Shown here: positions 1,986 through 33,844 of the stretch, one piece after another
How positions within the stretch are numbered: position 1 is the stretch's first letter
Layout: each line of letters opens with the position of its first letter
From: Raja brachyura
Taxonomy: Eukaryota
Length of the DNA: 64,000 bases
Direction: 5' to 3'
Assembly (NCBI GenBank): GCA_963514005.1
Contig: OY740798.1
Coordinates: 51,646,001-51,710,000, forward strand
Program-made: the position numbers and the translations under genes
Notes under the pieces: generated by a model
What the model saw: only the letters and a program-made list of their open reading frames with translations
What the model was told of the DNA's origin: nothing
Databases searched by the model: none

Positions 1986-2171
1986 GAACTGCAGATGCTG
2001 GTTTACACTGAAGATAGACACAAAATGCTGGAGTTACTCAGCGGGTCTGGCAGCATCTCTGGAGAAAAGGAATAGGCGACGTTTTGGGTCAAGACCCTTC
2101 TTCAGACCCTTGTATCTTCAGAAAGACCATTTAGATTGCCAAGTTCTAATTACCTGCTTTGTTTTGACTAG

Positions 2172-2603
2172 TTCCTCCAGAGATCAATGGACCCAATGGA
2201 CGTCAAACCATGAAACATCAGGAAAAAGAAAAGGCCACTTGGTGGGTGCGTTCATTCCGACCTCGTGAAATTACAATTCACTTATACCTAAAGAGGAAGG
2301 GGGATCAGGTGAGAAATAAAATTTTAAATTGGAACAGCAAAGAGTATATTCCACACAGAAATGGAATGATCAATGGAGAGGGTCGCAATGAAGCGAAGAT
2401 TCTTATGAATTCAAACTGCGTCGATGCATCTTTTACACCATTGGATCACGAATATAACAGTAATGCAGATGGGACTTACAGTGTGACGATCAATGTAGAA
2501 ATATATCCAGATGTTAACAAGGATGCAGGGGCTGAATTAACCATTGAAGTTCAACATAAATCACTGAAACAAACAAAGACTTTGATACTGGATGTAAAAG
2601 GAG
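2172..2603 (+). CDS. Ig-like exon 1 (C1-set-like, both canonical cysteines replaced) of a multi-Ig-domain gene
   Basis: AG acceptor 2170-2171 and GT donor 2604 (G|GTAAAG). Open 432-nt phase 1-1 exon: xPPEING...WVRSFRPREITIHL...NADGTYSVTINVEIYPDVNKDAGAELTIEVQHKSLKQTKTLILDVKG. The FxPxxI, DGTYS and VxHxSL C1 motifs are present. Confidence 0.8.
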
Positions 2604-2671
2604 GTAAAGTATAAATGTTTTCTTTAATCATTAATGTCTATATATTGTGATTTAATTCTCAATGTCTTCAG

Positions 2672-5600
2672 TCATAGTGATACAGCGTAGAAACAGGCCC
2701 TTCAGCCCAACTTGCCCAAGCCGACCAACATGTCAGTCAGTCTGGACACTTCACCCCATCTGCCCGCGTTTGGTCCATATCCCTCTAAACCTGTTCTATT
2801 CATCTACCTGTCAAAATATTTATTTAAAATTGTGATAGTACCTACCTCAACTACCTCGTCTGGCAGCTTGTTCCACACACTCACCACCTTTGTATGAAAA
2901 GGTTACCCCTCAGATTCCGATAAAATCTACCCACCTTCCTCATCTTAAATCTATGTCCTCTGGTCCTCGATTCACCTACTCAGGGTAAAAGACTCTGTGC
3001 ATCTACTCGATCTAGTCCTCTGATAATCTTCTACACCTCTATTTGATCACTCCTCATCGTCCTGTGCTCCAAGGAATAGAGTCCTAGCCTGCTCAACCTC
3101 TCCCTATAGCTCAGACCCTCAGTTCCTGGCAAGATCCTCGTAAATCTTCTCTGCACTCTTTCCAGCTTGACAGCTGTGGCTAAGGGGATCAGGGGGTATG
3201 GAGAGAAGGCAGGTACAGGATACTGAGTTGGATGATCAGCCATGATCATATTGAATTCCTGCCTTCTCTCCATACCCCCTGATCCCTTTAGCCGCAAGGC
3301 CACATCTAACTCCCTCTTAAATATAGCCAATGAACTGGCCTCAACTACCTTCTGTGGCAGAGAATTCCAGAGATTCACCACTCTCTGTGTGAAAAATGTT
3401 TTCCTCATCTCAGTCCTAAAAGATTTCCCCCTTATCCTTAAACTGTAACCCCTTGTCCTGGAGTTCCTCAACATCGGGAACAATCTTCCTGCATGTAGCT
3501 TGTCCAACCCCTTAAGAATTTTGTAAATTTCTAGAAGATTCCCCCTCAATCTTATAAATTCCAGCAAGTACAAGCCGTGTCTATCCAGTGTTTCTTCATA
3601 TGAAAGTCCTGACATCCCAGGAATCAGTCTGGTGAATCTTCTCTGTACTCCCTCTATGTCAAGAATGTCTTTCCTCAGATTTGGATCAATCTCGTGAACC
3701 TACGCTGCTCTGCCTCAATCACAAGGATGTCCTTCCTCAAATTAGGAAACCAAAACTGTACACAATACTCCAGATGTGGTCTCACCAGAGCCCTATACAA
3801 CTGCAGAAGAACCTCTTTACTCCTCTACTGAAATCCCCTTGTTATGAAGGCCAACATTCCATTAGCTTTCTTCACTGCCTGCTGTACCTGCACGCCAACT
3901 TTCAGTGACCGGTGTACAAGGACACCCAAGTCTGGCTGCACCACCCGCTTAACTAACCTAACCCCATTGATATAATAATCTGCCCCCTTGTTTTTGCTGC
4001 CAAAGTGAATAACCTCACATTTATCTATATTATACTGCATCTGCCACGCATCTGCCCACTCACTCAACCTGTCCAGGTCACCCTGCAACCTCCTAACATC
4101 CTCTTCACAGCTCACACTGCCACCCAGCATTGTGTCATTCGCAAATGTGCTAGTGTTGCTCCTAATTCCCTCTTCCAAATCATTAATATATATGGTAAAC
4201 AGTTGCGGCCCCAACACCGAGCCTTGCGGCACTCCACTCGCCACTGCCTGCCATTCTGATCCGGTCTGCCAACCAATTTTCTATCCATGTCAACGCCCTA
4301 CCCCCAATACCATGTGCTCTAATTTTAGTCACCAGTCTCCCGTGCAGGACCTTATCAAAGGCTTTCTGAAAGTCTAGATACACTACATCCACTGGCACCG
4401 CTTCATCCATTTTACATGTCACATCCTCAAAAAATTCCAGAAGATTAGTCAAGCATGATTTCCCTTTCATAAATCCATGTTGACTTGGACTAATCCTTTT
4501 ACTGCTATCCAAATGCCCCGTTATTACCTCTTTAATAATTGACTCCAGCATCTTTCCCACTACCGAAGTCAGGCTAACTGGTCTGTAATTCCCCGTTTTC
4601 TCTCTCGCTCCTTTCTTGAAAAGTGGCGTAACATTAGCTATCCTCCAATCCACAGGAACTGATCCTAAATCTATTGAACATTGGAAAATGATCACCAATG
4701 CGTCCACTATTTCTAGAGCCACCTTCCTGAGGACCCTGGGATGCAGACCAACAGGCCCAGGGGATTTATCATCCTTCAGTCCCATTAGCCTACCCAATAC
4801 TATTTCTCGCCTAATGACAATTTCTTTCAGTTCCTCTACCCCCTTAGATCTTCTGTCCTCCAGTACATCTGGGAGATTGTTTGTGTCCTCCTTAGTGAAG
4901 ACAGATCCGAAGTACCTATTCAACTCTTCTGCCATTTCCTTGTTGCCCATAATAATTTCACCCGTGTCTGCCTTCAAGGGACCCACATTTGACTTTGCTA
5001 CTCTTTTTCCCTTAACATATCTCAAGAAGCTTTTACTGTCCTTCTTTATATTCCTGGCCAGCTTCCCTTCATATTTCATCTTTTCAGCCCGTATTGCCTG
5101 TTTTGTTTCCTTCTGTTGTCCTATGAAAGTTTCCCAATCCTCTGCCTTCCGGCTACTCTTTGCTGTGTTATACATCTTTTCTTTTAGTTTTATTCTATCC
5201 CTAACCTCTCTTGTAAGCCACGGTTGCCTCCTACTCCCCTTAGAATCTTTCTTCCTTTTTGGAATGAAATGATCCTGCGTCTTCCGGATTATGCCCAGAA
5301 ATTCCTGCCATTGCTGTTCCACCGTCATTCCTGCTAGGATCCCTTTCCAGTCTACTTTGGTCAGCTCCCCTCTCATGCCTTCATAGTCCCCTTTGTTCAA
5401 CTGCATCACTGACACTTCCGATTCAACCTTCTCCTTCTCAAATTGCAGATTAAAACTAATCATATTATGATCTCTGCCTCCAAGCGGTTCCTTTACCTCG
5501 AGTTCTCTTATCATATCTGGTGCATAGGACAACACTACAAGCTGCTCTAAGAATCCATTACGGAGGCATTCTACAAACTCTCTTTCTTGGGGCCCTGAAC

Positions 5601-5895
5601 CAACCTGATTTTCCCAGTCTACCTGCATATTGAAATCCCCCATCACCACAGTGACATTACCTTTGTTACATGCCAGTTTTAACTCCTGCTGCAACGTACA
5701 CCCGACATCCGGGCTACTATTTTGGGGTCTGTAGATAACACCAATTAGTGTCTTCTTGCCGTTACAATTTCTCAACTCAATCCACAGTGACTCTACCTCG
5801 TCAGTCCCCATGTCTTCCCTCGCAAGGGACTGGATTCCATCCCTCACCAGCAGAGCTACCCCCCCCCCCCCCCCCCCCCCCACTCCTCTGCCCAC
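2672..5895 (-). mobile_element. Nested/fragmented CR1-type LINEs (APE endonuclease + RT)
   Basis: ORF 4183-5895 has GDFN, DHNMI, KSPGPVG, NYRPVSLTS, QHGF and YLDFQKAFDKV; 3825-4244 has GVPQGSVLGP; 3' fragments have LEFxRLRG and FFTQRVVNLWNSLP. Internal deletions and frameshifts. Confidence 0.92.
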
Positions 5896-6019
5896 CTTAT
5901 CTTGACCTTTAGGAGATTCATCAGTTGACTCAAGTCACGGAATATTCACACAGTAATGTAATATTTTCTTGCTTTTGTGAATTTCAACTAGGTGATTTGT
6001 TTGTTTTCTTTTCTCAAAG

Positions 6020-6397
6020 TGCCACCCAAGGTTTTAAACATCTTCAAACCCTCTTGCATCATTCACAATGAATCTGCATCTTTGATCTGTTCAATCACTG
6101 GGTTTAAACCGAGACCGTTACGTATCACGTGGCAACGAAAGAGAAAGAACATGGAGGCGGAAGAAATAGTTCGAATGGAGGAGGACAACAGGACAATTAT
6201 TCCCGGTGGTGACGGGGAGATGTCCAAATATAAACATTACATCAGTGAGATGAAGCATGATGATGAATCCTACAGCATCACCAGTGTACTCGTGATAGTG
6301 CCTGATATACAGCAAGATCAACACTCGCTTTACACGTGTAAAGTACATCACAGCGGCACCGGTGACCAGGAGAGAGAAATCGAGTTAATGATTGCAG
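6020..6397 (+). CDS. Ig C1-set exon 2
   Basis: Polypyrimidine tract + AAG acceptor (6018-6019); GCAG|GTATAT donor. Open 378-nt phase 1-1 exon: VPPKV...LICSITGFKPRPLRITW...SYSITSVLVIVP...YTCKVHH, with canonical C, W and C and a long C-D insertion. Confidence 0.9.
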
Positions 6398-6499
6398 GTA
6401 TATAATACTTCCATCTAAGCTTTGCATTGACAGAGGATGCAGAGTGCCTACTTATTTGGAACGGTGTCTTAAATATCATACCACAACCATTAATGTACG

Positions 6500-6915
6500 C
6501 AGTGCGTTTGAAGGCTCTGGGTCTGTACTCGCTGGAGTTTAGAAGGACGAGGGGGGGATCTCATTGAACCTACTGAATAATGAAAGGCCTGGATAGAGTG
6601 GATGTAGAAAAGATGTTTCCACTAATGTGAGACTCCAGGACCAGGCTCAGAGTAAAAGGATGTACCTTTACAATGGAGATGAGGAGTTTCTTTAGTCAGA
6701 GGTTGGTGACTCGGTGGAGTTCATTGCTACAGGCAGCTGTGGAAGCCAAGTCATTGGGTTTTTCAAAGCGGAGATTTATAGGTTCTTGATTAGTAAGAAT
6801 GTCAAAGGTTAAGTGGAGAAGGCAGGAGAATGGGGTTGAGAGGGAAAAATAGATCTACCATGATTGAATGGCGGAATTGAGTCAATGGACCGAATGGCCT
6901 AATTCTACACTGCCT
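6500..6915 (+). mobile_element. CR1 3' fragment
   Basis: LGLYSLEFRR..G.L-like remnant and the 3' UTR 'gaatggcctaattct' shared with other CR1 copies in the window. Confidence 0.7.
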
Positions 6916-7288
6916 TTTACAAGGGGAATGATTTTGAATGGTTTTGAAAAAAACACAATAATAGGATACAATTGTATTGGGGTTAATGAAGTCATTCATT
7001 TTTCAAAAATTATATGTGTCTTTTGCATAGTTTTCAAAAACATGGGTGATTGCGTTTCTGGCCATTGATCACGGAAAGGCCAAACATCTATTCCTTAGTT
7101 TTGCAAAACTGCTTGTGTTTGAATATAGAAACAAGGAACTGCAGATGCTGGTTTATACCAAAGATAGACACAATGTGCTGGAGTAACTCAGCGGGTCAGG
7201 CAGCATCTCTGGAGAAAAGGATGGGTGACGTTTTGGGTCGGGGCCCTGCTATCTTGACTTGTGTTTGAAGTCTTGTTTTTTATTTCAG

Positions 7289-7588
7289 CCATTCCAAAAG
7301 TGGACTTAATAAAGTGCTGCGCAGAGAAGATAATTGATGGTGTACCCATGACGATGAGCTGTGAAATACATGCGTTTTACCCCAGAGACATCACAGTGAA
7401 ATGGCTGAAAAATGAAGAGACGTTGCAGAATTTCAAAGTTGCTGAGCCAGTAATTGGTCAGGATAGTCTCTATCATGTGACAAGTGATGTGGAGATAGTC
7501 CCCACCAGGGCTGGGGCAACAGACAAATACACGTGCCACGTGTCCCATCTGAGCCTGACTGAGCCATTACACACTTCTTGTGTTGCAG
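7289..7588 (+). CDS. Ig C1-set exon 3
   Basis: TTTTTATTTCAG acceptor; GCAG|GTGAAA donor. Open 300-nt phase 1-1 exon: AIPKV...MSCEIHAFYPRDITVKWLKN...LYHVTSDVEIVP...YTCHVSHLSLTEP, a textbook C1 signature (YxCxVxH). Confidence 0.93.
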
Positions 7589-7667
7589 GTGAAATGGGTA
7601 CGTAACAACGTTTACGCCAAGACTGCTTTCATCTGAACTTCTTAAACAGTCTTCAGTTGGTAATTCA

Positions 7668-11415: not shown

Positions 11416-11718
11416 GTACAAAACAGATAGATGGTTCCTCAGAACTTTCAATCTTTCATCCCTTGTTTTCTTAATTTTTTGTTAATATTTCTCTGAATTC
11501 TAGTGTTCTTTAAATTACACGTTCAGATTAACCTTTTTTTCCCCTTTTCTCCAGCTTCATGTCCAGAGCTTACAGCAATTGAGGTCGATCCACTTTGCCC
11601 CGAAATGGGAAAGGAAGTAACACTCTCCTGCAAAGCTTACGGGTTCTATCCTGAAGGAAATTCAATATTCTGGTTCAAAGGAATACAACAAATCGTAGGT
11701 CTATTGGAACCAGGAATT

Positions 11719-14700
11719 TCATTTCGGAGTCACGTGAGTGACTTCGTGAAGAGCCCGCCGGCGCGCATGCTCGACATATCGTCGTACCGCGTTGCTGCGA
11801 CGGCTGGCGGTGGAGCGCGCTCCTCGCCAGCCCTTCAGAAGGGGCCACGGAGGTAAGTATTCTACCTTTAGTTGGTGGTCCTTGTTGTTGGTTTTGTCTT
11901 GCAGCAAGGACATGGATGGGAGTTCCAAGGGCCGGAGGACGTCAGGACGAGTTCGCCGGTCAACAGTTCCGGGGCCTTTACCATCGGCAGTACCTGCATC
12001 GCAGGCCGGGACTCAGGCGGAGATGTGGGTAAGCCCTGTGTTTACAGGTCCAGATCCGCCAGCACACCACAGCTCGGAGGAGTTCGACGAGGAGGAGTGT
12101 GGTGTGCCGCCAGAGCAGGGGGACCCTGCCATGGCAGTCAGGTCGTCAGCGGGCTCGCTGGCGACCTCGAGCTGGGTGCGTGCGGCTGCACGGCCTGTTC
12201 CACTCCGAGAAGGGGAAGGGCAGGAGCCCAGAAGCCTAACCCTACCAGGGCTAAGGCATTGCCTGACACGGAGGAGCGGTCAGGTTCCAGGGAAAGACCC
12301 GGGGCGGCTGTGAGGTCCAGCCGGCACGCCCCGACTCTCGACGCCGGGACGGGTCGGTCGAGTCGGGTCTCGTCACGGTCGCCGAGCCCCCCATGGATGG
12401 GTGGGCGAGACCATGCGTCGGCAACGTCCACGATGTGGGCAGCCGGCAAGACTGCGCGGGCCCCAGGCAGCCATGCTTCGGCTGGTGCCGACACCTCGCC
12501 GCAAGTGCCCTTAGTGGCAGCGGCTTCAGCTCCCGCTAAACGGAGGCGGTTGAACACGCCCGCGCAGGAATCGCGCAGTTCGCCTCGGCGGCTGTTAGCG
12601 ACAACTACCGGCACCGGCAGGGCCTCGACGAGGTGCGGGCCGATGACAGGAGCCCGGTTTTCTTTTCAGAGCCGGAGGACTCCGACCACCTGAGTGTTCA
12701 GGGTGAAGGGCGTATTGACCGTATGGAGCGGCTGCTGGAGCTCCTGCTTCAACGTCAACAACAGCAGGGCAGCAACAGGCACAGGGCGTCTTCACAAACA
12801 TCTACCATCAGCCTGGAGCAGCAGGAAGAAGTCCTCATCCAGGCAATGAGCCGTCACAAGGCTCCATCCAATTGCAACTCCCTCAACGTGCCTGTGGTCA
12901 ATACGCCGATATGGGGCAACATCAGTGCGGCTATCCGTCAACAGGAGGTAAAACTGCAGCGGATCCTGAAGCTCCTCACGGCCGGTATTACCGCCTTTGT
13001 GCGGTCGGTGGACGGGGACGAATTGAATTTGGACCAGGGAGATGCCCTGGCCCTCCTGTGCGCGACCCAGCACGAAATTAACGGGTTTCGCAAAACCAGC
13101 ATCCGCCCAGCGCTCAATCCAAAGTTTGCAGGAGTGTGCAAACCACCGCCGCCGCCCCCGCCCCGTCAGCTCTTTGGGAAGGACCTCTCGAAGAGAGTCA
13201 AAGAGCTTGACGAGCAAGCCAAAACGGTGGGGATCATGCGCCCTCAGAGTGCCCCCACACCGTCAGGCTCAAAGTCTCCATACATTCGATCACGAGGGTC
13301 TGCCAGTACCTCGACGAGGACCCAGCCTCAAGCTCCACAACGACAGCAACATCAGACCCAGCACCAGGGGTCTTTTTTAGGACAGGGTCGGCAGAGACCC
13401 TGGTGGAAAACGAAGACGCAGCGCCCTCAAGCCAACCCAGCACCTCCACGTCCACACACGCGTGTCAAGGACCGCCGGTAACCACGGAGGTGAGGGGGTC
13501 TGGTTCTCTCTTTTCTCTCTGTTTAACTTCACATGTTGGTGGTCACCTTCGGTGGTTTTTTGGGTGCATGAGGTAATTTCACTGGTGACGAGTATGTGTT
13601 GCAGAATATTCAGGGGCATAAAATTGAGTTTATTAATGGCGACATTCCTCCATCCCAGCACATGCCCGCTCGAACATTTAAAATTATCTGCTGCAGAACA
13701 GGCAGCCGGCTATAAGGAATTGTTAAGTCTTGAGCAAAGGAGTGATTAAGAGAGTGGTGCATGAGCCAGTTGAATTTGTTTCGAACATATTCACCAGACC
13801 TAAGAAGGATGGAAGTTGTCGTGTCATTATTGATCTAACCCGTTTGAATACTTTTGTAACATATTCTCATTTTAAAATGGATACGATGAAACAACCAAAT
13901 CATTGATTTCTCATGGTTGTTTTATGGCATGCATCGGTTTAAAAGACGCATATTATTCCGTATCCGTCCAGAAATGTGACAGAAGGTTTTAAAAATTCAT
14001 CTGGATGGGGCAACTCTGGCAGTACAAGGCTTTGCCTAATGAGCTCACCACAGCCCTAGATTGTTCACTAAATTAGTGAAGCCAATTATGGCTTATTTGA
14101 GACAACGACACCATATAGTATGGCCTATTTAGATGATGTCTTAATTGTGGGCCACACCCTGGAATTGGCTGAGCAGGGTGTTGCAGCTGCTGTCAATATA
14201 TTTCAACAATTGGGGTTTATTGTCCATCCAGAGAAATCAAAGTTCTACCCTGCCCAGGTGATTAATTACCTAGGGTTCACGGTGAACTCTATAAGCATGA
14301 GGGTTACCATTCCAATTAACAAGATTGAGGAGGTTACCCAGGTGTGTCAAGATTTAATCCGCACCAATATACCATCGATTCGGCACTTAGCTACAATAAT
14401 TGGGAAGCTGGTAGCTTTGTTTTCGGCAGCGCGATATGGACCTTTGCATTATCAGAATTTGCAAAGAGCTAAAATTGCTGCGTTAAAACAGAACGTTGGT
14501 TATTATGATCGGTCCATGCAGCTGCCGCCCGAAGCGATAAATGAGTTGCAATGGTGGGTGTGTCACATTAGCAACTCATTCAAGCCTATTAGGGAGGCTA
14601 ATCCGGTGGTATATTTGCAAACTGATGCAAGCTCCAATGGTTGGGGATCCACGAATAATTGCTCTAGTTGTGGTGGCAGATGGGACACCCTTGAATCAAC

Positions 14701-16858
14701 GATGTTGTTAGCTCAAGGGATTAACTATTTGGAGTTGCTGGCAGCATTCCACGGACTTCGTGCGTATTGTTCTAAGCTTGTGGAGCACATGTCCGTCTCC
14801 AAATAGACAACACCACAGCAGTAGCATATTTAAACCATATGGGTGGTACCAGGCCTGTTTCGTGTGACAAATTGGCAAACTCAATTTGGCTCTGGTGTGT
14901 TCAAAGAGACATTTGGATTTCAGCTACCTATTTGCCAGGTGAGCTTAATACTGTGGCGGACACCAGGTCACGCAAATTTAATGACAACATTGAATGGATG
15001 TTGCATCCTGAGATCTTTTCTAAAGTCACAGCCAAATTTGGTAAACCGGACATTGACCTCTTTGCGTCACGGTGGAACCATCAGGTACCAACCTACGTTT
15101 CATGGGAACCAGATCCTGGGGCAATAGCGCTAGATGCATTCTCGCTGGACTGGGGGAAGTGGTTTTTCTATGCCTTCCCCCCATTTTGCCTCATCAGTCG
15201 GGTATTGGGAAAGATTCAGGCAGATGCTGCCAAGGGCATCCTTATTATACCCGACTGGCCCACACAGCCTTGGTATCCGGTGGTCTTTGACATGCTCAAC
15301 GAACCTTGGGTCCTTTTGAAGGGTTGCCCACAATTGGTTACTCACCCTGTGTCAGGGGAGCCGCATCCCTGCCATGGCTATTTAAATTTGTTGGCTTGCA
15401 GGTTCTGAACAGGCCGTTAGTCCAATACGGCCTCTCGGCTCGGACCATGGATACCACCGGGGCGTCGTGTCGAGAGTCTACAAGGCGAAGATACCGCTCG
15501 CATATTAAGAAGTGGGAAGCCTACTGCAGCCGCTCTCGCATCACGTACGATGACGTGACAACAACCGACGTCCTGGAATTCCTCGCGGGGTTGCACCATG
15601 ATGAACACTTAAGTTACAGTGCCATCAACAGCGCCAGAAGTGCGCTATCATTCTACCTCAGTTTGGAGGTAGGATCCAACAGGCTAGTGTCCAGACTCAT
15701 GCGGGGTATATTCAATATGAATCCGCCTACACCACGCTATAATATCACCTGGGATGTCAGGGACGTATTAACCCTGCTCAGGACGTGGTCACCCATGGAA
15801 GGGCTCCAACTGGACCAACGCACCATGAAGCTGGTGATGTTACTAGCGCTGACTTCAGCTCAGAGGGTACAGACACTACACAAACTTCGTGTCGACAGAA
15901 TGACGTCTACCCCCACAGAAGTAGTCTTTTTCATTGACGAGCTACTAAAGCAGCATAGACCTGGGTGCACAGGGCTGCAGCTGAAGTTCCCGGCATACCC
16001 CGCAGATGCTAGGCTATGTGTAGCCTCACATATCCGCCACTATGTCAAGGTGACGGCACGCATCAGAGGAATGGAGCGATACCTGCTTGTCACTCATAAG
16101 AGACCTCATCATCGAGTGACAGTCCAGACGATATCCATGTGGCTTCCAGTCGTTTTGGGTAAGTCAGGTATCGACACTAATGTGTTCAAGTCTCTTTCCA
16201 ACAGGGCTGCATCGACGTCATCGGCGAGGGTCATGGAGGTGCCCATGGACAAAATTCTCGCTACAGCAGGATGGGCTAATGAAGCTGTGTTCCAGCGTTT
16301 TTATAACAAGCCTGTTGCTGCTCCTCTACAGTTTACAGAAGCCGTGCTGAATGCAGGTCACGAACGTGGAGATGTCCCCGCATGAGGGGTTTTGATTTGT
16401 TATTAATAACTCTGCTCTTGTTTTGCAGTATGAACTATTGAGCAAGTTTGTTCCTCCCATCCATCCCTGGTAGTGGTGTGTCAGCATGGACGTGGTCCAG
16501 GGCGTGTAATCACAGAAGCTTTGAAGTCTTCACGAAGTCACTCACGTGACTCCGAAATGAAATAGTAAGATTGAACGAGAACTTACCAGTTCGAAGGTTG
16601 ATCATTATTTCATGAGGAGTCGAAGTGAGGGATTTCGTGCCCTCCTCGCCCAACCCTCAATCACCTTCATCTGGTAATCTTAGTCACTTCAATCTTACTA
16701 TGCGAAGTCATTTCTTTGTTGGTTTCTGTGATTCCACGCCGCTACTTTGAAGTATGTCGAGCATGCGCGCCGGCGGGCTCTTCACGAAATCCCTCACTTC
16801 GACTCCTCATGAAATAATGATCAACCTTCGAACTGGTAAGTTCTCGTTCAATCTTACT
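11719..16858 (+). mobile_element. DIRS1-type tyrosine-recombinase retrotransposon, copy A (degenerate)
   Basis: Left ITR from 11719; right ITR plus extension at 16753-16858; internal complementary region at about 16527-16639. The gag, RT (YLDD), RNaseH, MT (DLFAS, YAFPPF) and YR ORFs are recognisable but frameshifted. gag lacks about 50 aa relative to copy B, and the YR motif HSTR has become LSNR. ATT flanks both ends. Confidence 0.95.
15402..16385 (+). CDS. Tyrosine recombinase of DIRS copy A (catalytic His altered)
   Basis: SAQRVQTL, LLKQHRP, AGW and FQRFY motifs are present; the HxxR motif reads LSNR. Confidence 0.85.
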   Translation, partial: VLNRPLVQYGLSARTMDTTGASCRESTRRRYRSHIKKWEAYCSRSRITYDDVTTTDVLEFLAGLHHDEHLSYSAINSARSALSFYLSLEVGSNRLVSRLMRGIFNMNPPTPRYNITWDVRDVLTLLRTWSPMEGLQLDQRTMKLVMLLALTSAQRVQTLHKLRVDRMTSTPTEVVFFIDELLKQHRPGCTGLQLKFPAYPADARLCVASHIRHYVKVTARIRGMERYLLVTHKRPHHRVTVQTISMWLPVVLGKSGIDTNVFKSLSNRAASTSSARVMEVPMDKILATAGWANEAVFQRFYNKPVAAPLQFTEAVLNAGHERGDVPA

Positions 16859-17430
16859 ATTACTCTGGAACCAACCAAACAGGACACTAAGAATGGTTGC
16901 TATTCTCGTTTATCCAAGTGGAAATTCACACCAGCTGCTGATGACCATGGAAGAGAATAGTAAGATTGAACGAGAACTTACCAGTTCGAAGGTTGATCAT
17001 TATTTCATGAGGAGTCGAAGTGAGGGATTTCGTGAAGAGCCCGCCGGCGCGCATGCTCGACATACTTCAAAGTAGCGGCGTGGAATCACAGAAACCAATC
17101 AAGAAATGACTTCACATAGTAAGAATGAAACGACTAAGATTACCAGCTGAAGGTGATTGAGGGTTGGGCGAGGAGGGCACGAAATCCCTCACTTCGACTC
17201 CTCATGAAATAATGATCAACCTTCGAACTGGTAAGTTCTCGTTCAATCTTACTATTTCATTTCGGAGTCACGTGAGTGACTTCGTGAAGACTTCAAAGCT
17301 TCTGTGATGACACGCCCTGGACCACGTCCATGCTGTCACACCACTACCAGGGATGGATGGGAGGAATAACTTGCTGACTAGTCCATACTGCAAAACAAAG
17401 CATATTTATTAACAAACAAATCAAAACCCC

Positions 17431-18420
17431 TCATTCGGGGACATCTCCACGTTCTTGCCCCGCATCTAGCACGGCTTCTGCGAACTGTAGAGGCGCAGCA
17501 ACGGGCCGGTTGTAAAACCGCTGGAACACCGTCTCATTAGCCCATCCTGCTGTGGCGAGAATATGGTCCATGGGCACCTCCATGACCCTCGCCGCCGACG
17601 TCGATGCAGCCCTGGTGGAATGAGATTTGAACACATTAGTGTCGATACCTGACTTACCCAAGACGACTCGAAGCCACCTGGATATCGTCTGTGTTGTCAC
17701 TCGATGGTGAGGTCTCTTATGAGTGACAAGCAGGTATCTCTCCATTCCTCTGATGCTTGCCGTCACCTTGACGTAGTAACGGATATGGGAGGCTAAGCAT
17801 AGCCTAGCATCGGCGGGGTATGCCGGGAACTTCAGCTGCAGCCCTGTGCACCCAGGTCTGTGTTGCTTCAGTAGTTCGTCAACAAAGAAAACTACTTCTG
17901 TGGGGGTAGACATCATTCTGTCGACACGTAGTTTGTGGAGTGTCTGTACCCTCTGTGCTGAAGTCAGCGCTAGTAACATCACCAGCTTCATGGTGAGTTT
18001 GTCCAGCTGGAGCCCTTCCATGGGGGACCACGTCCTGAGCAGAGATAAAACGTCCCTGACATCCCAGGTGATACTGTAACGTGGTGTAGGCGGATTCGTA
18101 TTGAAAATACCCCGCATGAGCCTGGACACTAGCCTGTTGGATCCCACCTCAATATTGAGGTGGAATGATAGAGCGCTCCTGGCGCTGTTGATGGCACTGT
18201 AGCTTAAGTGTTCATCATGGTGCAACCCCGCGAGGAATTCCAGGACGTCGGTTATAGTCACGGCATCGTACGTGATGCGAGAGCGGCTGCAGAAGGCTTC
18301 CCACTTCCTGATGTGAGAGCGGTATCTTCGCCTTGTAGACTCTCGGCACGACGCCGCAATGGTATCCATGGTCCGGGTAGAAAGGCCGTATTGTTCTAAA
18401 GGCCGATTCAGAATCTGCAA
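17431..18420 (-). CDS. DIRS tyrosine recombinase (YR)
   Basis: Complete catalytic set: R (SAQR), K (LLKQ), HSTR, AGW, Y (FQRFY). Confidence 0.95.
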   Translation of the reverse strand: MQILNRPLEQYGLSTRTMDTIAASCRESTRRRYRSHIRKWEAFCSRSRITYDAVTITDVLEFLAGLHHDEHLSYSAINSARSALSFHLNIEVGSNRLVSRLMRGIFNTNPPTPRYSITWDVRDVLSLLRTWSPMEGLQLDKLTMKLVMLLALTSAQRVQTLHKLRVDRMMSTPTEVVFFVDELLKQHRPGCTGLQLKFPAYPADARLCLASHIRYYVKVTASIRGMERYLLVTHKRPHHRVTTQTISRWLRVVLGKSGIDTNVFKSHSTRAASTSAARVMEVPMDHILATAGWANETVFQRFYNRPVAAPLQFAEAVLDAGQERGDVPE

Positions 18421-20417
18421 GCCAACAAATTTAAATAGCCATGGCAGGGATGTGGCTCCCCTGAAACAGGGTGAGTAACTAATTCTGGGCTACCCTGCAA
18501 ACGGACCCAAGGTTCACTGAGCGTGTCAAAGACCATCGGATACCATGGCTGTGTAGGCCAGTCGGGTATGATAAGGATGCCCTTGGCACCGTCCATCTGA
18601 ATTTTACGTAATACCCGACTGATGAGGCAAAACGGGGGGAATGCATAGAAAAAGCAATTCCCCCAGTCTAGCGAGAATGCATCTAACGCTATAGCCCCAG
18701 GATCTGGTTCCCACGCGACGTAGGTTGGTACCTGATGGTTCAACCGGGACGCAAAAAGGTCAATGTCCGGTTTCCCAAATTTGGCTGTGATTTTTGCAAA
18801 AATTTCAGGATGTAACATCCATTCAATATTATCATTGAACTTGCGTGACCTGGCGTCCGCCACAATATTAAGCTCACCTGGCAAATAGGTAGCTGAAATC
18901 CAAATGTCTCTCTTGACACACCAGAGCCAAATTGAATTAGCCAATTTATCACATGAAACTGACCTGGTACCGCCCATGTGGTTTAAATATGCCACCGCTG
19001 TGGTATTGTCTATTTGGAGCCGGACATGTGCTCCAATGATCTTGGAACAATATGCACGAAGTCCGTGAAACGCTGCAAGCAGCTCCAAATAGTTGATCCC
19101 TTGTGATACCAACATCGTATTCTCAAGGGTATCCCATCGGCCCCCACAACTAGAGAATTGATTCGTAGCTCCCCAGCCATCAGAGCTCGCATCAGTTTGT
19201 AAGTATATCATCGGTTTCGCCTCAATAATAGTTTTGAACGAGTTACTAATGTGGCAAACCCACCATCGTAATTCATCCAATGCTGCAGGCGGCAGCCGCA
19301 TTGATCGATCATAATGACCAGCATGCCGTCGCAACGCAGCGATCTTGGCTCTCTGCAAGTTTTGATAATGCAGAGGTCCATACCGGGCTGCCGGAAACAA
19401 AGCCACAATCTTGCCAATGACAGTAGCTGAGTGACGAATCGATGGTATACGAGTATTAATCAAGTCTGTACACACCTGTGTTACCTCCTCAATTTTGTTA
19501 ATTGGTATGGTGACTCTCATGCTAATGGAATTCACCTGGAACCCCAGATAATTAATTACCTGGGTGGGGCAGAACTTAGATTTTTCTGGATGAACAATGA
19601 ACCCAAGCTGTTGGAACAAATTGACCGCAGCTGCAACCCCTTGTTGTGCTAATTCCAAGGTGTGGCCGACAATTAAAATATCATCTAAATAGGCCATAAC
19701 AATATGATGTCTTTGTCTTAAATAAGCCATAATTGGCTTCACCAATTTAGTAAATAAGCGAGGGGCTGTGGTGAGCCCATTAGGCAACGCCCTATATTGC
19801 CACAGCTGATCCATCCAGATAAATTTTAAGAACCTTCTGTAATATTTTTTCATAGGTACGGTATAGTACGCATCCTGTAAATCGATGCATGCCATAAAGC
19901 ACCCTTGTGAAATCAATGATTTGGCCGTTTCAAACGTGTCCATTTTAAAATGAGTATATGTTACAAAGTTATTCAGAGTGGTTAGATCAATAATGACTCT
20001 ACAGCCTCCATCCTTCTTAGGTCTAGTAAAAATATTGGAAACAAATTCAACGGGCTCATGAACCGTTCTCTCTATGACCCCTTTCTGTTCCAACCTTAAA
20101 ATTTCCTTATAGCCAACTGACTGTTCCGCAGCCGTTAGTTTGAAAGTACGACCCGGTCTATGCTGAGGTGGAGGGATGTCCCCATTAATAAACTCAATAC
20201 TATGGCCCTGAATATTCCGTAACACATACTCATCGCTGGTAATGTCACCCCATGCACCCGCAAACAACCGCAAACGCCCACCAACATGTGGAGTTAAACA
20301 AAGAGAAAAAAGAGAACCAGATCGCCTCACCTCTGTGGTTACCGGCGGTCCCTGACACGGGTGGGTGGTCGTGGAGGTGCTGGGTTGGTTTGAGGTCGTG
20401 GCGTCCTCATTTTCCAC
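18408..20417 (-). CDS. DIRS pol: reverse transcriptase + RNase H + DNA N6-adenine methyltransferase-like domain
   Basis: PKKDGGCRVIIDL, IDLQDAY, LPNGL and YLDD (RT); TDAS, NYLELLA, DNTTAV and NIVADARSR (RNase H); DIDLFAS and YAFPPF (MT). Confidence 0.96.
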   Translation of the reverse strand: MENEDATTSNQPSTSTTTHPCQGPPVTTEVRRSGSLFSLCLTPHVGGRLRLFAGAWGDITSDEYVLRNIQGHSIEFINGDIPPPQHRPGRTFKLTAAEQSVGYKEILRLEQKGVIERTVHEPVEFVSNIFTRPKKDGGCRVIIDLTTLNNFVTYTHFKMDTFETAKSLISQGCFMACIDLQDAYYTVPMKKYYRRFLKFIWMDQLWQYRALPNGLTTAPRLFTKLVKPIMAYLRQRHHIVMAYLDDILIVGHTLELAQQGVAAAVNLFQQLGFIVHPEKSKFCPTQVINYLGFQVNSISMRVTIPINKIEEVTQVCTDLINTRIPSIRHSATVIGKIVALFPAARYGPLHYQNLQRAKIAALRRHAGHYDRSMRLPPAALDELRWWVCHISNSFKTIIEAKPMIYLQTDASSDGWGATNQFSSCGGRWDTLENTMLVSQGINYLELLAAFHGLRAYCSKIIGAHVRLQIDNTTAVAYLNHMGGTRSVSCDKLANSIWLWCVKRDIWISATYLPGELNIVADARSRKFNDNIEWMLHPEIFAKITAKFGKPDIDLFASRLNHQVPTYVAWEPDPGAIALDAFSLDWGNCFFYAFPPFCLISRVLRKIQMDGAKGILIIPDWPTQPWYPMVFDTLSEPWVRLQGSPELVTHPVSGEPHPCHGYLNLLACRF

Positions 20418-22072
20418 CTCGGCTTCTGCCGAGCCTGTCCTAAAAAAGACCCCTGGGGTTGGGGTGGCTGATATCGGTTTGGAGCTGGAGGGTAATTCCT
20501 GGTGGAAGTGCTGACAAACCCTCGTGAACGGCCAAGTGGGGCTTTCGAGCTTGATGGCGTGGGGGCACTGTGAGAGCGCATGAGCCCCACGGTCTTGGCT
20601 TGTTCATCCAGCTCTCTGACCCTTTTGGAGAGGTCTTCGCCAAAGAGCTGACGGGGCGGCGGCGGCGGCGGTGGTTTGCACAACCCTGCAAACTTAGGGT
20701 TGAGCGCTGGGCGGATGCTGTGTTTGCGAAAGCCGTTTATTTCGTTTTGAGTAGCGCACAGAAGCGCCAGAGCATCCTCCTGGTCCAAATTAAGCTCCTC
20801 TCCGTCGACCGACCGCACAAAGGCAGTAATCCCGGCCATGAGGAGTTTCAGGATCCGCTGAATTTTCAGCTCCTGCTGACGGATAGCCGCACTGATGTTG
20901 CCCCATATTGGCGTATTGACCACAGGCACGTTCAGGGAATTGCAGTTTGATGGAGCCTTGTGGCGGCTCATGGCTTGTAGCAGGACTTCCTCCTGAAGCT
21001 GGTGATTATTTAGGAAGTCCACTGTGGCTGCCAACTTCGTATTGATGGGAAGCCCCAACGAATGAGGGGCTGCAAATTTGGTAGCCACATCGAGGAGGTC
21101 CTCCGCCGGTAATTCAGGCGGGGGTGGGATGGGGTCAACCACGGCCTCCTCGTCCTGCTGCTCCAGGCTGGTGTACGAAGCTGGTGATGAAGCCCTGTGC
21201 CTGTCGCTGCTGGATGCCTGTTGTTGTTGACCTTGTAGGAGAAGCTCCAGCAGCCGCTCCATCCGGTCAATACGCCCTTCACCCTGAACACTCAGGTGGT
21301 CGGAGTCCTCCGGCTCTGAAAATTGGCCGGGGCTCCTGTCATCGGCCCGCACCTCGTCGAGGCCCTGCCGGTGCCGGTAGTTGTCGTCGACAGCCGCCGA
21401 GGCGAAACTGCGCGATTCCTGCACGGGCGTGTTCAACCGCCTCCGTTTAGCGGGAGCGGAAGCCGTTGCCTCTATGGACAGGTGCGGCATGGTGTCGGCA
21501 CCAGCCGAAGCCTGGATACCTTGAGCCCGTGCAGGCTTGCCAGCTGCCCACATCGTGGACCTTGCCGACGCATGGTCTCGCCCACCCATCCATGGGGGGC
21601 TCGGCGACCGTGACGGGACCCCCAACTGACTCGTCCCGGCGTCGAAAGTTGGGGGGCGACGGCTGGACCTCACAGCTGCCCCGGGTCCCGTCCTGGAACC
21701 TGACCGCTCCTGGGCGGCAGGCAGAGCCTTAGCCCCGACAGGGTTAGGCGTCTGGGCTCCTGCCCTTCCCCTTCTCAGAGGGCTGCGTGAAACGGGCCGT
21801 GCAGCCGCACGGACCCTTCTGCTCGAAGCCGTCAGCAAGCCTGCTGACGACCTGGCTGCCATGGCAGGGTCGTCCTGCTCTGGCGGCACACCACACTCCT
21901 CCTCGTCGGACTCCTCCGAGCTGTGGTGTGCGGGCGGGTCCGGACCTGAAAAGACAGAGCTCACCGACATCTCCGCCCTCGTTCCGGTCTGCGTTGCAGG
22001 TACCCCCGACAACTCTCGCTCCGGAACCGCTGGCCGGCGACTTCTCCTCGAACTCCGGCCTCTCCCATCCAT
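20339..22072 (-). CDS. DIRS gag-like ORF1
   Basis: Long open frame from the ATG at 22072; low-complexity N-terminus, then PSNCNSLNVPVVNTPIW...IRPALNPKF...LFGEDL. Collinear with the broken ORFs of copy A and overlaps the pol start. Confidence 0.85.
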   Translation of the reverse strand: MDGRGRSSRRSRRPAVPERELSGVPATQTGTRAEMSVSSVFSGPDPPAHHSSEESDEEECGVPPEQDDPAMAARSSAGLLTASSRRVRAAARPVSRSPLRRGRAGAQTPNPVGAKALPAAQERSGSRTGPGAAVRSSRRPPTFDAGTSQLGVPSRSPSPPWMGGRDHASARSTMWAAGKPARAQGIQASAGADTMPHLSIEATASAPAKRRRLNTPVQESRSFASAAVDDNYRHRQGLDEVRADDRSPGQFSEPEDSDHLSVQGEGRIDRMERLLELLLQGQQQQASSSDRHRASSPASYTSLEQQDEEAVVDPIPPPPELPAEDLLDVATKFAAPHSLGLPINTKLAATVDFLNNHQLQEEVLLQAMSRHKAPSNCNSLNVPVVNTPIWGNISAAIRQQELKIQRILKLLMAGITAFVRSVDGEELNLDQEDALALLCATQNEINGFRKHSIRPALNPKFAGLCKPPPPPPPRQLFGEDLSKRVRELDEQAKTVGLMRSHSAPTPSSSKAPLGRSRGFVSTSTRNYPPAPNRYQPPQPQGSFLGQARQKPRWKMRTPRPQTNPAPPRPPTRVRDRR

Positions 22073-22427
22073 GTTCTTGCTGTGAAACAAACACAACAAG
22101 AACCACCAACTTAAGGTAGCATACTTACCTGCGTGGTTCCCTTATGAAGGGCTGGCGAGGAGCACGCTCCTCCGTCAGCCGTCGCAGCAACGCGATACGA
22201 CGATATGTCGAGCATGCGCGCCGGCGGGCTCTTCACGAAGTCACTCACGTGACTCCGAAATGAAATTTAAGATGAAAGTCCTTCATTCTGCAACTTCAAG
22301 CAATGCCATCGCTACCAGTTACACTTTAAAATTAAAAGGTGAATATTGTTGCAGCAAAATCTGCAGCCACATCATACCATAAGACGGATGTGGAAAAGGC
22401 GCAGAAGAGGTTTATCAAAATGCTTAG

Positions 22428-22610
22428 GAAGGAACTGCAGATGCTGGTTTACACCGAAGATAGACACAAAATACTGGAGTAACTCAGTGGGACAGGCAGC
22501 ATCTCTGGAGAGGAGGAATGGGTGACATTTCGGATGGAGACCCTTCTTCAGTCCTTCTCTCCAGAGATGCTGCCTGTCTCACTGAGTTACTCCAGCATTT
22601 TGTGTCTTTT
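22428..22610. mobile_element. Short Penelope-derived fold-back element with a hammerhead-like core
   Basis: Arms 'gacacaaaatactggagtaactcagtgggacaggcagcatctctggagag' and 'ctctccagagatgctgcctgtctcactgagttactccagcattttgtgtc' are inverted; the minus strand has CTGAAGA-A-GGGT-CTCC-ATCC-GAAA. Confidence 0.7.
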
Positions 22611-22619
22611 TTATCAATA

Positions 22620-23905: not shown

Positions 23906-24075
23906 CCTTATAATAACAGTGGCCTTACATCAACATAAGGCTAGTTGTATTGGCTACAAAGCAATACAACTTCTCTCTCAAGAGTTCCACTTAAAACTAG
24001 CGGAATGCAGCAGACAAACTAGTGGGTGTAACGACAAATGGATGACTTATAACATGAGTCACTGATCTACACCAG

Positions 24076-24393
24076 CTTTGCCTCCTACCTTATCTCCTAT
24101 CACAAGTGATCCGGCTCCAAGGCTACTGAAAGTGAAGCAAGCTGATAATCTCTGTGTCTCCTTGACATCCTGTGTTCCTGCTCAAATCCAAGTCAAGTGG
24201 CTCCTAGATGGGAAGCTTTGCCAAGGAAGGTGTGAATGCTCTCCTGAGATCACAGATGATGGTTTGTTTTAATCTAATGTGAGCATAATGTTGGAGGCAG
24301 GAATAAATGATCACAGAGGTTGCATCAAATGTCAGGTGCTTCATGTGAAGACCGGAAACATTCAGGAGAAGGAATTCTAATTACTCTCTGAGG
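24076..24393 (+). pseudogene. Ig C1-set-like exon 5 with two in-frame stop codons
   Basis: CCAG acceptor (24075) and GAG G|GTGAAT donor. 318-nt phase 1-1 exon: ALPPTLSPITSDP...LTSCVPAQIQVKWLLDG...DDGLF*SNVSIML...IKCQVLHVKTGNIQEKEF*LLSE, with TAA at 24270-24272 and 24378-24380. Confidence 0.85.
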
Positions 24394-24509
24394 GTGAATC
24401 TTACTCTGTAGTGTTATGTTCAGCATGACATTTCATTAAAGTTAGAACTGCAATGCTGATGTTAGTGTAGAGATACAGCATGGAAACAAGCCCTTGGCCC
24501 ACTGTGTTA

Positions 24510-27500: not shown

Positions 27501-27650
27501 GCAATTTGAGAAGGAGAACGTTAAATCGGAAGTGTCAATGATGCAGTTGTATAAAGGGGACTATTGAGGCATGAGAGGGGAGCTGGCCAAGGTAGACTCG
27601 AAAGGGATCCTAGCAGGAATGATGGTGGAACAGCAATGGCAGGAATTTCC
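24510..27650 (+). mobile_element. CR1 fragment (end of SGNH-esterase-like ORF1 + APE start of ORF2) interrupted by another CR1
   Basis: ...LYKRDGLHLN|GWGTSILA... is continuous across the insert; then YMNAQSIRSK, GITETWL, GGVALLV and GDFN. Confidence 0.8.
24683..26606 (-). mobile_element. Young 5'-truncated CR1 LINE with an open RT frame
   Basis: 545-aa ORF 24761-26398 (YMDFSKAFDKV, VPQGSVLGP, YADD); (CCATATAA)n tail; TCTTAAC target-site duplication at 24676-24682 and 26607-26613. Confidence 0.93.
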
Positions 27651-33799: not shown

Positions 33800-33844
33800 G
33801 TTTTGGCAAAATAGAAAATGTTGTCAATGAAAATGTCGATAAAG
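33800..33844 (+). CDS. 45-bp micro-exon, copy 2 (GFGKIENVVNENVDK)
   Basis: Same acceptor and donor as copy 1; phase 1-1. Confidence 0.75.

What the first reader, a model, noticed from the sequence alone, without database searches (positions are those of the whole stretch)
11555..22338. One Ig exon hit twice by DIRS elements, 97 bp apart in opposite orientation, and perfectly reconstructable
Seen: host-element junctions are CCAGGA-ATT|TCATTTCGG...CTTACT|ATT-ACTCTG (copy A) and GGAAGAG-AAT|AGTAAG...CCGAAATGA|AAT-TTAAG (copy B, reversed). Removing each element plus one ATT gives ...P-G-I-T-L-E... and ...G-R-E-F-K-M..., an open 111-codon exon with intact splice sites. The copies differ at many positions, so they look like independent insertions rather than a local duplication. 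Inference: two hits in a 333-bp exon amid kilobases of intron suggest a local hotspot, homing next to a resident element end, or tolerated/selected knockout of this domain.
Basis: partly seen in the sequence, partly recalled or inferred. Interest (0 to 1): 0.8.

Follow-up and report, generated by a model that had tools for sequence, protein, structure and literature searches.

The report
Two jumping genes in one exon
Two different copies of a DIRS jumping gene sit 97 bases apart, back to back, inside one immunoglobulin-domain exon of a skate-like fish gene whose later exons already look decayed, so this is most likely a tolerated double hit rather than a new mechanism.

Summary
A phase 1-1 exon of 333 nt (11555-22338) lies in three pieces of 164, 97 and 72 nt. 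It is split by two DIRS1-like retroelements, A (11719-16858, +) and B (16959-22263, -), placed right end to right end. Each is flanked by ATT.

- **Independent insertions.** A and B are about 86% identical, and their differences favour third codon positions.
- **Collinear pieces.** The pieces align to adjacent residues of uninterrupted homologues in seven cartilaginous fishes.
- **Empty sites.** Contigs of 2 of 4 public runs join piece 2 to piece 3, skipping exactly B plus 3 nt. They also stop matching exactly at A's boundary.
- **Decayed gene copy.** The next recognisable exon has two in-frame stops, and the exon expected before it is missing. A knockout here was probably tolerated.
- **No sequence hotspot.** The target flanks look like any other ATT site.
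- **Not tested.** Homing to a resident copy remains open. No reads confirm the double-insert allele.

Other notes of this scan reported the ATT crossover elsewhere in this genome.

The parts
11555..11718 (+). Exon piece 1 (164 nt, 54 whole codons after 2 leading bases). AG acceptor at 11553-11554. Its last codon ATT (11716-11718) is the crossover trinucleotide of copy A.
   Evidence: Aligns to A. radiata P0001 residues 898-951, 43 of 54 identical. Pfam C1-set 18.4 bits, below the cut-off of 21.
11719..16858 (+). DIRS1-like copy A, 5140 nt. gag and pol are broken; the recombinase ORF (15306-16385) is open. Left terminus starts at 11719, the internal complementary region (ICR) is 16527-16639, and the right terminus ends at 16858.
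   Evidence: Against B it has 9 length changes not divisible by 3 and 2 stops in gag/pol columns, and none in the 329 recombinase codons. Termini and ICR are 100% complementary over 37 and 79 nt (I20 and I14).
16859..16861 (+). ATT at the right boundary of copy A, the second copy of the crossover trinucleotide.
   Evidence: The contigs of X1 and X8 begin to match the window exactly here (tables 5 and 8).
16862..16958 (+). Exon piece 2 (97 nt). Its last three bases, AAT (16956-16958), are the crossover trinucleotide of copy B.
   Evidence: Aligns to P0001 residues 952-983, 24 of 32 identical.
16959..22263 (-). DIRS1-like copy B, 5305 nt, with all three ORFs open: gag-like 20339-22099 (586 aa), RT plus Dam-like methyltransferase 18408-20417 (669 aa), tyrosine recombinase 17431-18420 (329 aa). 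ICR at 17178-17290.
   Evidence: RVT_1 77.1 bits; Dam 19.2 bits (below cut-off); Phage_int_SAM_4 29.4 bits; Phage_integrase 26.2 bits (cut-off 27.1). Termini and ICR are 100% complementary (I15 and I21).
22264..22266 (+). AAT at the outer boundary of copy B, the second copy of its crossover trinucleotide.
   Evidence: Joint 16955->22264, skipping 5308 nt with 3 ambiguous letters, in X1 and X8 (table 5).
22267..22338 (+). Exon piece 3 (72 nt), followed by a GTGAAT donor at 22339.
   Evidence: Aligns to P0001 residues 985-1007, 18 of 23 identical. One residue (F984) stands for the codon split between pieces 2 and 3.
16448..17369 (.). Inner part of the 10.5-kb inverted repeat. The two right-end arms of 414 nt are 98% complementary (10 mismatches) around a 94-nt spacer.
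   Evidence: (I4). Seven of the 10 mismatches lie in 16670-16718.
2171..7602 (+). Three upstream open exons of the same gene, at about 2171-2602, 6019-6402 and 7267-7602. The latter two look C1-set-like by their sequence motifs (no Pfam scan was run on them).
   Evidence: They are 80%, 92% and 73% identical to P0001 residues 522-667, 668-795 and 787-898.
24075..24392 (+). Next recognisable exon of the gene, with two in-frame TAA codons (24270-24272 and 24378-24380).
   Evidence: The stretches either side of the first stop are 48 of 64 and 23 of 35 identical to R. longicauda P0162. The stops align to S962 and Q998.

Best explanation
Two DIRS1-like tyrosine-recombinase retroelements from different sub-lineages of one abundant family integrated separately into one Ig-domain exon. 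A is a defective copy, probably moved by the proteins of others. B is intact. Each integration was a recombinase crossover between the ATT of the element's circular junction and an ATT in the host DNA. That leaves ATT on both sides of the element and no other change.

The exon belongs to a long multi-Ig-domain gene that is conserved in cartilaginous fishes. The 3' part of the copy in this assembly is damaged in other ways, so exon hits were not removed by selection. On this reading the closeness of the two hits is chance, not targeting.

Shown: the junctions, the element anatomy, the independence of the two copies, the empty sites elsewhere, and the other lesions of the gene. Inferred: the circular intermediate, the order and dates of the two events, the tolerance, and that closeness is chance.
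For: **Anatomy fits the published DIRS1 model.**
- Both copies have inverted termini.
- The ICR reads as the reverse complement of the left end, then AAT, then the reverse complement of the right end.
- Domains run gag, then RT, then a weak Dam-like match, then tyrosine recombinase.
- ATT flanks both copies.
- Passages of PMC3266345 and PMC7192593 describe integration at a 3-nt junction sequence without target duplication, with ATT the commonest trinucleotide.

**Independence of the two copies.**
- Identity is about 86%.
- Differences are biased to the third codon position.

**Both insertions are young.** In each copy the termini match the ICR with 0 mismatches over 37 + 79 nt.

**Empty sites.**
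- In 2 of 4 runs (X1 and X8) one contig joins 16955 to 22264, skipping 5308 nt, which is B plus 3 nt.
- On the left these contigs match only from 16859 and carry 278 and 345 further letters. Those letters do not fit A's right end, although 159 nt of it were on offer.

**Collinearity.** Pieces 1, 2 and 3 align to adjacent residues in 3 of 3 skates and in the same order in all 7 homologues.

**Tolerance.**
- Exon 24075-24392 has two in-frame stops.
- The exon for the domain that follows in 5 of 6 homologues compared with A. radiata was not found in 22339-27800; the best E-value was 0.24.
- The window differs at residues invariant in three skates in 20 of 109, 3 of 103, 8 of 71 and 10 of 79 positions (exons at 2171, 6019 and 7267, and the interrupted exon).

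**Abundant family.**
- 31,185, 15,094 and 14,742 contigs of X1, X2 and X8 were laid on the 5.7 kb.
- Summed word depth is 10^3 to 10^4 times that of the single-copy contig. The tool warns that this is not a copy number.
Against: - Under random placement a second hit this close is unlikely. Two random ATT/AAT sites in this window lie within 100 nt with P = 0.005 and both in the exon with P = 5.6e-5.
- The other 53.5 kb hold no copy of the family.
- One X1 contig shows a DIRS left end and a DIRS right end only 36 letters apart at another locus (table 5c), which hints that close pairs recur.
- Dictyostelium DIRS-1 is reported to enter pre-existing copies preferentially (PMC7192593, passage).
- No read or contig shown to me carries the double-insert allele. 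X2 and X11 had no contig on the exon pieces at all.
- The other damage lies in exons that the A. radiata and L. erinacea models also lack or that vary between species, so it does not prove the gene was dead before the insertions.
- The contigs' unlaid left parts were not printed, so A's empty site is inferred from where the match stops.
Confidence: 0.72

Rival explanations
1. Local targeting. A resident DIRS copy attracts the next one. Recombinase bound to the resident's ICR and right end would tether an incoming circle, which then crosses over at a nearby ATT. Close pairs, here right end to right end with 395 nt from A's ICR junction to B's site, would then be a regular product.
For: - Closeness is improbable under random placement (P = 0.005).
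- Both right ends, which carry the ICR, face the spacer.
- A second close pair of DIRS ends, 36 letters apart, appears in an X1 contig (table 5c).
- DIRS-1 preferentially enters pre-existing DIRS-1 (PMC7192593, passage).
Against: - This is one case found after the fact in a scan.
- With roughly 10^3 to 10^4 copies per genome, a few pairs within 100 nt are expected by chance (my arithmetic on the rough figure).
- The known preference is for insertion into DIRS sequence, not beside it.
- The target flanks resemble neither the junction nor each other.
Confidence: 0.17
2. Assembly artefact. The two insertions are not in cis, for example one per haplotype merged into one path, or one of them is a mis-join in repeated DNA.
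For: - No read-level check was possible. All 4 runs laid were contigs, and none of the 32 listed pieces bridges an exon piece and a DIRS end.
- X1, the best holder, carries only the empty exon. At the five piece-2 positions listed, total depth equals that one contig, 70.2.
Against: - All four junctions fall exactly on ATT crossovers.
- The three host pieces are collinear, in frame and not duplicated. A random mis-join would not do that.
- A haplotype switch would need an overlap inside 97 nt.
- Even in trans it would still be two hits in one exon.
Confidence: 0.06
3. One insertion followed by a local inverted duplication, with divergence in place.
For: The two copies form a 10.5-kb inverted repeat whose inner 414 nt are 98% alike.
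Against: - The differences are strongly biased to the third codon position, which decay in place would not produce.
- B keeps three open ORFs.
- No host sequence is duplicated or inverted.
- Each copy has its own pair of ATT flanks at a different exon position.
Confidence: 0.01

Closest known systems
DIRS1-like retrotransposons of vertebrates and other eukaryotes, as surveyed in PMC3266345 (passages read)
   Same: - Inverted terminal repeats.
- Two internal complementary regions that meet at a 3-nt circular junction.
- RT, methyltransferase and tyrosine-recombinase domains.
- Elements beginning and ending next to ATT.
- Integration without target duplication.
   Different: - The host is a skate-like cartilaginous fish. 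'Chondrichthyes' does not occur in that paper's text (0 hits).
- The family looks very abundant, roughly 10^3 to 10^4, against 2091 copies in zebrafish, the highest count given there.
- Two copies from different sub-lineages sit in one exon.
Dictyostelium DIRS-1 clusters (PMC7192593, passage)
   Same: New copies end up at or in resident copies.
   Different: - There the insertion is into DIRS-1 sequence, in centromeric heterochromatin.
- Here the second copy is in host coding DNA 97 nt from the first, not nested.
Other notes of this scan on the same genome: s1-881250, s1-881040 and s1-881400 (ATT crossover, filled and empty sites) and s1-881169 (this same stretch read as a giant inverted repeat)
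   Same: ATT core identical to the ICR junction; filled versus empty sites.
   Different: - Here the empty sites come from contigs of other sequencing runs and from homologous proteins.
- Two sites lie in one exon.

Membership tests
DIRS1-like retrotransposon | Reverse transcriptase domain | tested here: met
   B ORF2: RVT_1 at 77.1 bits, cut-off 29.6. In A only the last 55 profile positions match, 28.1 bits.
DIRS1-like retrotransposon | Methyltransferase domain after RT/RNase H | tested here: inconclusive
   Pfam Dam scores 19.2 bits in B and 20.2 bits in A at the corresponding place. Both are below the cut-off of 28.1.
DIRS1-like retrotransposon | RNase H domain | tested here: inconclusive
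   No RNase H family was listed for B ORF2 at E up to 1. No more sensitive test was run.
DIRS1-like retrotransposon | Tyrosine recombinase encoded 3' of pol, on the same strand | tested here: met
   B ORF3: Phage_int_SAM_4 at 29.4 bits (cut-off 27). The catalytic Phage_integrase domain scores 26.2 bits, just under 27.1. A ORF 15306-16385: Phage_int_SAM_4 at 33 bits.
DIRS1-like retrotransposon | Inverted terminal repeats | tested here: met
   Arms of 45 nt, 96% complementary, in each copy (I18 and I19).
DIRS1-like retrotransposon | Internal complementary regions matching both termini and meeting at a 3-nt circular junction | tested here: met
   37 nt and 79 nt including the trinucleotide, 100% complementary in both copies (I14, I15, I20, I21).
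DIRS1-like retrotransposon | Flanked by the junction trinucleotide with no further target duplication; the empty site holds one copy | tested here: met
   ATT/AAT at all four boundaries. The empty joint has 3 ambiguous letters in X1 and X8.
Immunoglobulin C1-set domain (the interrupted exon) | Match to the Pfam C1-set profile | tested here: inconclusive
   Piece 1 alone scores 18.4 bits, cut-off 21. Pieces 2 and 3 give no C1-set hit. The homologue P0001 has 7 C1-set stretches, 244.9 bits, but I did not see whether residues 898-1007 are one of them. The joined exon was not searched, by rule.
Immunoglobulin C1-set domain (the interrupted exon) | Canonical pair of cysteines | tested here: not met
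   The first Cys (…LSC…) is present. At the place of the second, the window and all 7 homologues have Met (…F/Y-K/T-M…). That this is the second-Cys position is my reading of the motif.
B7H6 (NKp30 ligand) gene | Orthology of the N-terminal V and C1 part to B7H6 | not tested
   The name comes only from scan note s1-880692 on DNA before this window. NCBI calls the homologues 'uncharacterized protein'.

The most novel reading that the evidence does not exclude
DIRS integration in this genome may be steered by resident copies. Recombinase assembled on a resident element's ICR and right end would capture an incoming circle and cross it over at the nearest ATT within a few hundred bases. Close pairs, especially right end to right end, would then be over-represented genome-wide. 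Such pairs create long near-palindromes, and the same recombinase could flip the short host segment caught between them.
Probability: 0.15. Interest if true: 0.6.

Novelty: new member of a known kind. Interest (0 to 1): 0.3.

Why it matters
This is a clean natural record of DIRS integration in a vertebrate. Four exact junctions, the matching circle junction inside each element and empty sites in other animals all agree with the crossover-at-ATT model, which has little direct evidence. It also shows a defective copy with perfect ends landing beside an intact one. That fits movement of dead copies by the proteins of live ones.

If close pairs prove commoner than chance, it would point to local targeting by a eukaryotic tyrosine-recombinase retroelement, whose target choice has not been tested experimentally (PMC7192593, passage). 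For the host it marks one Ig-domain exon of a conserved, unnamed multi-Ig gene of cartilaginous fishes as dispensable or already lost in this lineage.

Tried and rejected
**Paralogous exon in the window.** I looked for an intact paralogous copy of the exon in the window as an internal empty site. There is none.

**Sequence hotspot.** Rejected. The target flanks match the junction, and each other, no better than background ATT sites.

**Inverted duplication.** Rejected by the codon-position bias.

**Gene conversion between the inner arms.**
- I considered this as the reason for their 98-100% identity.
- It was not needed. The outer left ends, 10 kb apart, are also 96% alike over 129 nt (I12), and the mismatches avoid the ICR and ITR. 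Constraint on the ends explains it.
- It is not excluded.

**Splicing the elements out as introns.** By eye, the donor-like and acceptor-like sites near A's ends would not restore the frame. I did not pursue this.

**Searches that gave nothing.**
- The ORF 11503-11853, scored on residues 18-72, found no protein of 64-205 aa. This says nothing about longer proteins.
- Three word look-ups in the scan's notes for pairs, nesting or pseudogenes found nothing useful.
- PMC9210276 has none of six terms on insertion preference.
- The paper searches listed no paper on DIRS in skates or on double hits in an exon. I saw listings and abstracts only.

**Not seen.** The supplements of PMC3266345 (copy lists) were not opened and might hold insertion-site data.

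Full report
**What is there.**

The window is vertebrate DNA. Its closest annotated proteins come from skates.

An exon opens after an AG at 11555 and closes before GTGAAT at 22338. Two elements lie inside it:
- Copy A is 11719-16858 on the + strand (5140 nt).
- Copy B is 16959-22263 on the - strand (5305 nt).

The right ends of the two copies face each other. The host DNA reads ...CCAGGA-ATT | A | ATT-ACTCTGG...GGAAGAG-AAT | B | AAT-TTAAG....

The three host pieces are 164, 97 and 72 nt, 333 nt in all. Each is open in its own frame. Piece 1 ends on a whole codon. Piece 2 leaves one T, which makes a codon (F) with the first two bases of piece 3. Both exon ends are in phase 1. Every search and alignment was done piece by piece, so the whole domain was not scored as one sequence.

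**What the elements are.**

B has three open reading frames:
- a 586-aa frame without a Pfam match;
- a 669-aa frame with RVT_1 (77.1 bits) and a weak Dam-like match (19.2 bits, below the cut-off);
- a 329-aa frame with the SAM-like N-terminal domain of phage integrases (29.4 bits) and the catalytic integrase domain (26.2 bits, just under the cut-off of 27.1).

Each copy has 45-nt inverted terminal repeats. Each also has an internal region that reads as the reverse complement of the left end, then AAT, then the reverse complement of the right end. This region is 100% complementary to the termini over 37 and 79 nt.

This is the DIRS1-like plan described in PMC3266345 (passages). In that model the element circularises and integrates by recombination between the 3-nt junction and the same 3 nt in the genome, without target duplication, and ATT is the commonest trinucleotide. 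PMC7192593 (passage) says the same and notes that the recombinase's specificity has not been tested experimentally.

**Are they independent?**

A and B are 86.6% identical over 4052 nt and 85.9% over 1127 nt. In a global alignment of 5327 columns, identity per 200 columns runs from 0.77 in pol to 1.00 at the right end. The last 327 columns have 7 mismatches.

Differences by codon position 1/2/3:

| ORF | pos 1 | pos 2 | pos 3 |
|---|---|---|---|
| gag-like | 63 | 57 | 116 |
| pol | 77 | 40 | 206 |
| recombinase | 19 | 19 | 59 |

Most of the divergence therefore arose under selection in replicating lineages, before either copy arrived here. A local duplication followed by decay is excluded.

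Relative to B, A has nine length changes not divisible by three and two stops in gag/pol columns, plus an in-frame 162-nt gap. It has no gap or stop in the 329 recombinase codons. Yet A's termini match its own ICR perfectly.

I take this to mean that A probably arrived already defective and was moved by the proteins of other copies. This is inference. With 0 mismatches in about 220 nt, decay after insertion is below roughly 1.4% per site at 95%, which does not strictly exclude later breakage.

**Is the three-piece join real?**

Piece 1 was searched alone against 1.84 billion representatives and found 166 proteins at E ≤ 0.001. The best was P0001 (E = 7.3e-39). NCBI names it an uncharacterized protein of Amblyraja radiata. 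A second search, with P0001 residues 890-1010, added Leucoraja erinacea, Rhinoraja longicauda, Pristis pectinata and Carcharodon carcharias (6 proteins among 161 candidates).

Aligned separately, pieces 1, 2 and 3 fall as follows:
- A. radiata: residues 898-951, 952-983 and 985-1007, with F984 standing for the split codon.
- L. erinacea: residues 900-953, 954-985 and 987-1009.
- R. longicauda: adjacent likewise.
- All seven homologues, including Narcine bancroftii and Callorhinchus milii: the same order.

Identity to A. radiata is 43 of 54, 24 of 32 and 18 of 23.

**Empty sites in other animals.**

A search for sequencing runs listed 24 runs. Twenty of them, from ten coded organisms, hold part of 16300-23300. 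All are kept as contigs and none is on record as RNA. I laid four runs (X1, X2, X8, X11, four organisms) on 16700-22400 at 90% likeness.

In X1 and X8 one contig each joins 16955 to 22264. It skips 5308 nt, which is B plus 3 nt, and 3 letters fit either side. The contig depths are 70.2 (X1) and 12.8 (X8).

On the left these contigs match only from 16859, the ATT at A's edge. They carry 278 and 345 more letters that did not fit the 159 nt of A's right end that were on offer. So both sites appear empty in those two organisms. For A this is inferred from where the match stops, because the unlaid letters were not printed.

How the contigs differ from the window:
- X8 differs at five listed positions of piece 2. 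X1 shares the window's letter at all five.
- X1 has 3 other letters in the 97 nt and 1 in the next 137, so it is close to the window but not the same allele.
- X2 and X11 had no contig on the exon pieces, which proves nothing.
- No listed piece (32 of 61,774) bridges an exon piece into a DIRS end. The double-insert allele itself rests on the assembly alone.

**The host gene.**

Mapping the homologues on the window gives open exons at about 2171-2602, 6019-6402 and 7267-7602, which are 80%, 92% and 73% identical to A. radiata. Then come the interrupted exon and an exon at 24075-24392.

That last exon has two in-frame TAA codons. They align to S962 and Q998 of R. longicauda.

The domain that follows the interrupted one in A. 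radiata is also present in 5 of the 6 other homologues compared. It has no recognisable exon in 22339-27800; the best E-value was 0.24.

At residues invariant in the three skates, the window differs as follows:

| Exon | Window differs |
|---|---|
| 2171 | 20 of 109 |
| 6019 | 3 of 103 |
| 7267 | 8 of 71 |
| interrupted exon | 10 of 79 |

The 3' half of this gene copy is therefore damaged in ways unrelated to DIRS, and the interrupted exon is no more diverged than its neighbours.

Caveats:
- The A. radiata and L. erinacea models also lack the 24075-type domain. Domain content varies between species, so these lesions do not prove that the gene was dead first.
- Skipping the 333-nt phase 1-1 exon would keep the frame.

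**Chance or targeting?**

The host DNA of the window has 2421 ATT/AAT sites in 53,549 nt, 21 of them in the exon. Two random sites lie within 100 nt with P = 0.005 and both in the exon with P = 5.6e-5. No other copy of the family lies in the window.

Against reading much into this:
- It is one case picked after the fact.
- The family is very abundant. X1, X2 and X8 gave 31,185, 15,094 and 14,742 contigs on the stretch, and X11 gave 508. Summed word depth is about 10^3 to 10^4 times the single-copy contig. The tool warns that this is not a copy number.
- With some 10^4 copies in a genome of a few Gb (size from recall), a handful of pairs within 100 nt are expected by chance. This is my arithmetic.

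The target flanks give no sign of a sequence hotspot. They match the circle junction at 7 and 9 of 30 positions and each other at 7 of 30, against a background mean of 7.9 for 2406 ATT sites.

For targeting there are two hints:
- One X1 contig shows a DIRS left end and a DIRS right end 36 letters apart elsewhere in the genome (table 5c).
- Dictyostelium DIRS-1 is reported to enter resident copies preferentially (PMC7192593, passage).

I cannot decide this without a genome-wide map.

**Verdict.**

The reading of two independent insertions is well supported. The best explanation for their survival is a tolerated hit in a relaxed or decaying gene copy. A sequence hotspot is not supported, and homing to a resident copy stays open at about one chance in six. 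The mechanism is the known DIRS one.

Other notes of this scan reported the ATT crossover and filled and empty sites elsewhere in this genome (s1-881250, s1-881040, s1-881400). They also read this same stretch as a giant inverted repeat (s1-881169).

**Limits.**
- No raw reads or RNA runs were on offer.
- Supplements of papers were not opened.
- Organism names of the runs are coded, so I do not know whether X1 is the window's species.

Noticed in passing
window 27865-64000: A complex tandem array with units of about 4.07 kb and longer composite units, 95-99% identical. It fills the rest of the window. Each unit holds a short weak match (14 aa, 57% identity, E = 2.6) to the acidic repeat of the A. 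radiata homologue, for example at 33802, 37878, 41939, 46011, 48915, 54635, 57530 and 62067. It may be an amplified small exon of the same gene.
   Followed up: partly
window 24075-24392: An exon of the same gene with two in-frame TAA codons (24270-24272 and 24378-24380). They align to S962 and Q998 of Rhinoraja longicauda. It is a pseudo-exon in this assembly.
   Followed up: yes
window 22339-27800: The exon for the Ig domain that follows the interrupted one in A. radiata, L. erinacea, R. longicauda, Narcine, Carcharodon and Callorhinchus was not found here (best tblastn E = 0.24). It is probably lost from this gene copy.
   Followed up: partly
P0001, P0002, P0006, P0160-P0164 (homologues): A family of 1000-1270-aa proteins, unnamed in NCBI and conserved from elephant shark to skates. 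An N-terminal V plus C1 part and a hydrophobic, membrane-span-like stretch are followed by a row of further C1-set-like domains. Ig domains after a membrane span would be unusual, and the models may fuse two genes.
   Followed up: no
window 22267-22290 and homologues: The interrupted domain has Met where I would expect the second canonical Ig cysteine (…F/Y-K/T-M…). This holds in the window and in all 7 homologues, so it is an old conserved feature and not decay.
   Followed up: partly
window 11719-16858: Copy A has broken gag and pol but an open recombinase ORF, and its termini match its ICR perfectly. This fits a defective lineage that still moves, as scan note s1-899846 suggests for this genome.
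   Followed up: partly
run X1 contig (table 5c, joint 22267->16954): A contig of depth 118.6 holds a DIRS left end and a DIRS right end separated by 36 other letters. That would be two elements in the same orientation about 40 nt apart at another locus.
   Followed up: no
window 16818 and 16999: Both copies share a letter in the right terminus that is a minority among family contigs: about 33% of depth in X1, about 10% in X2 and X8, and 0 in X11. The two right ends may be closer kin to each other than to most of the family.
   Followed up: partly
window 8977-9143: A run of 167 N. I left it alone.
   Followed up: no
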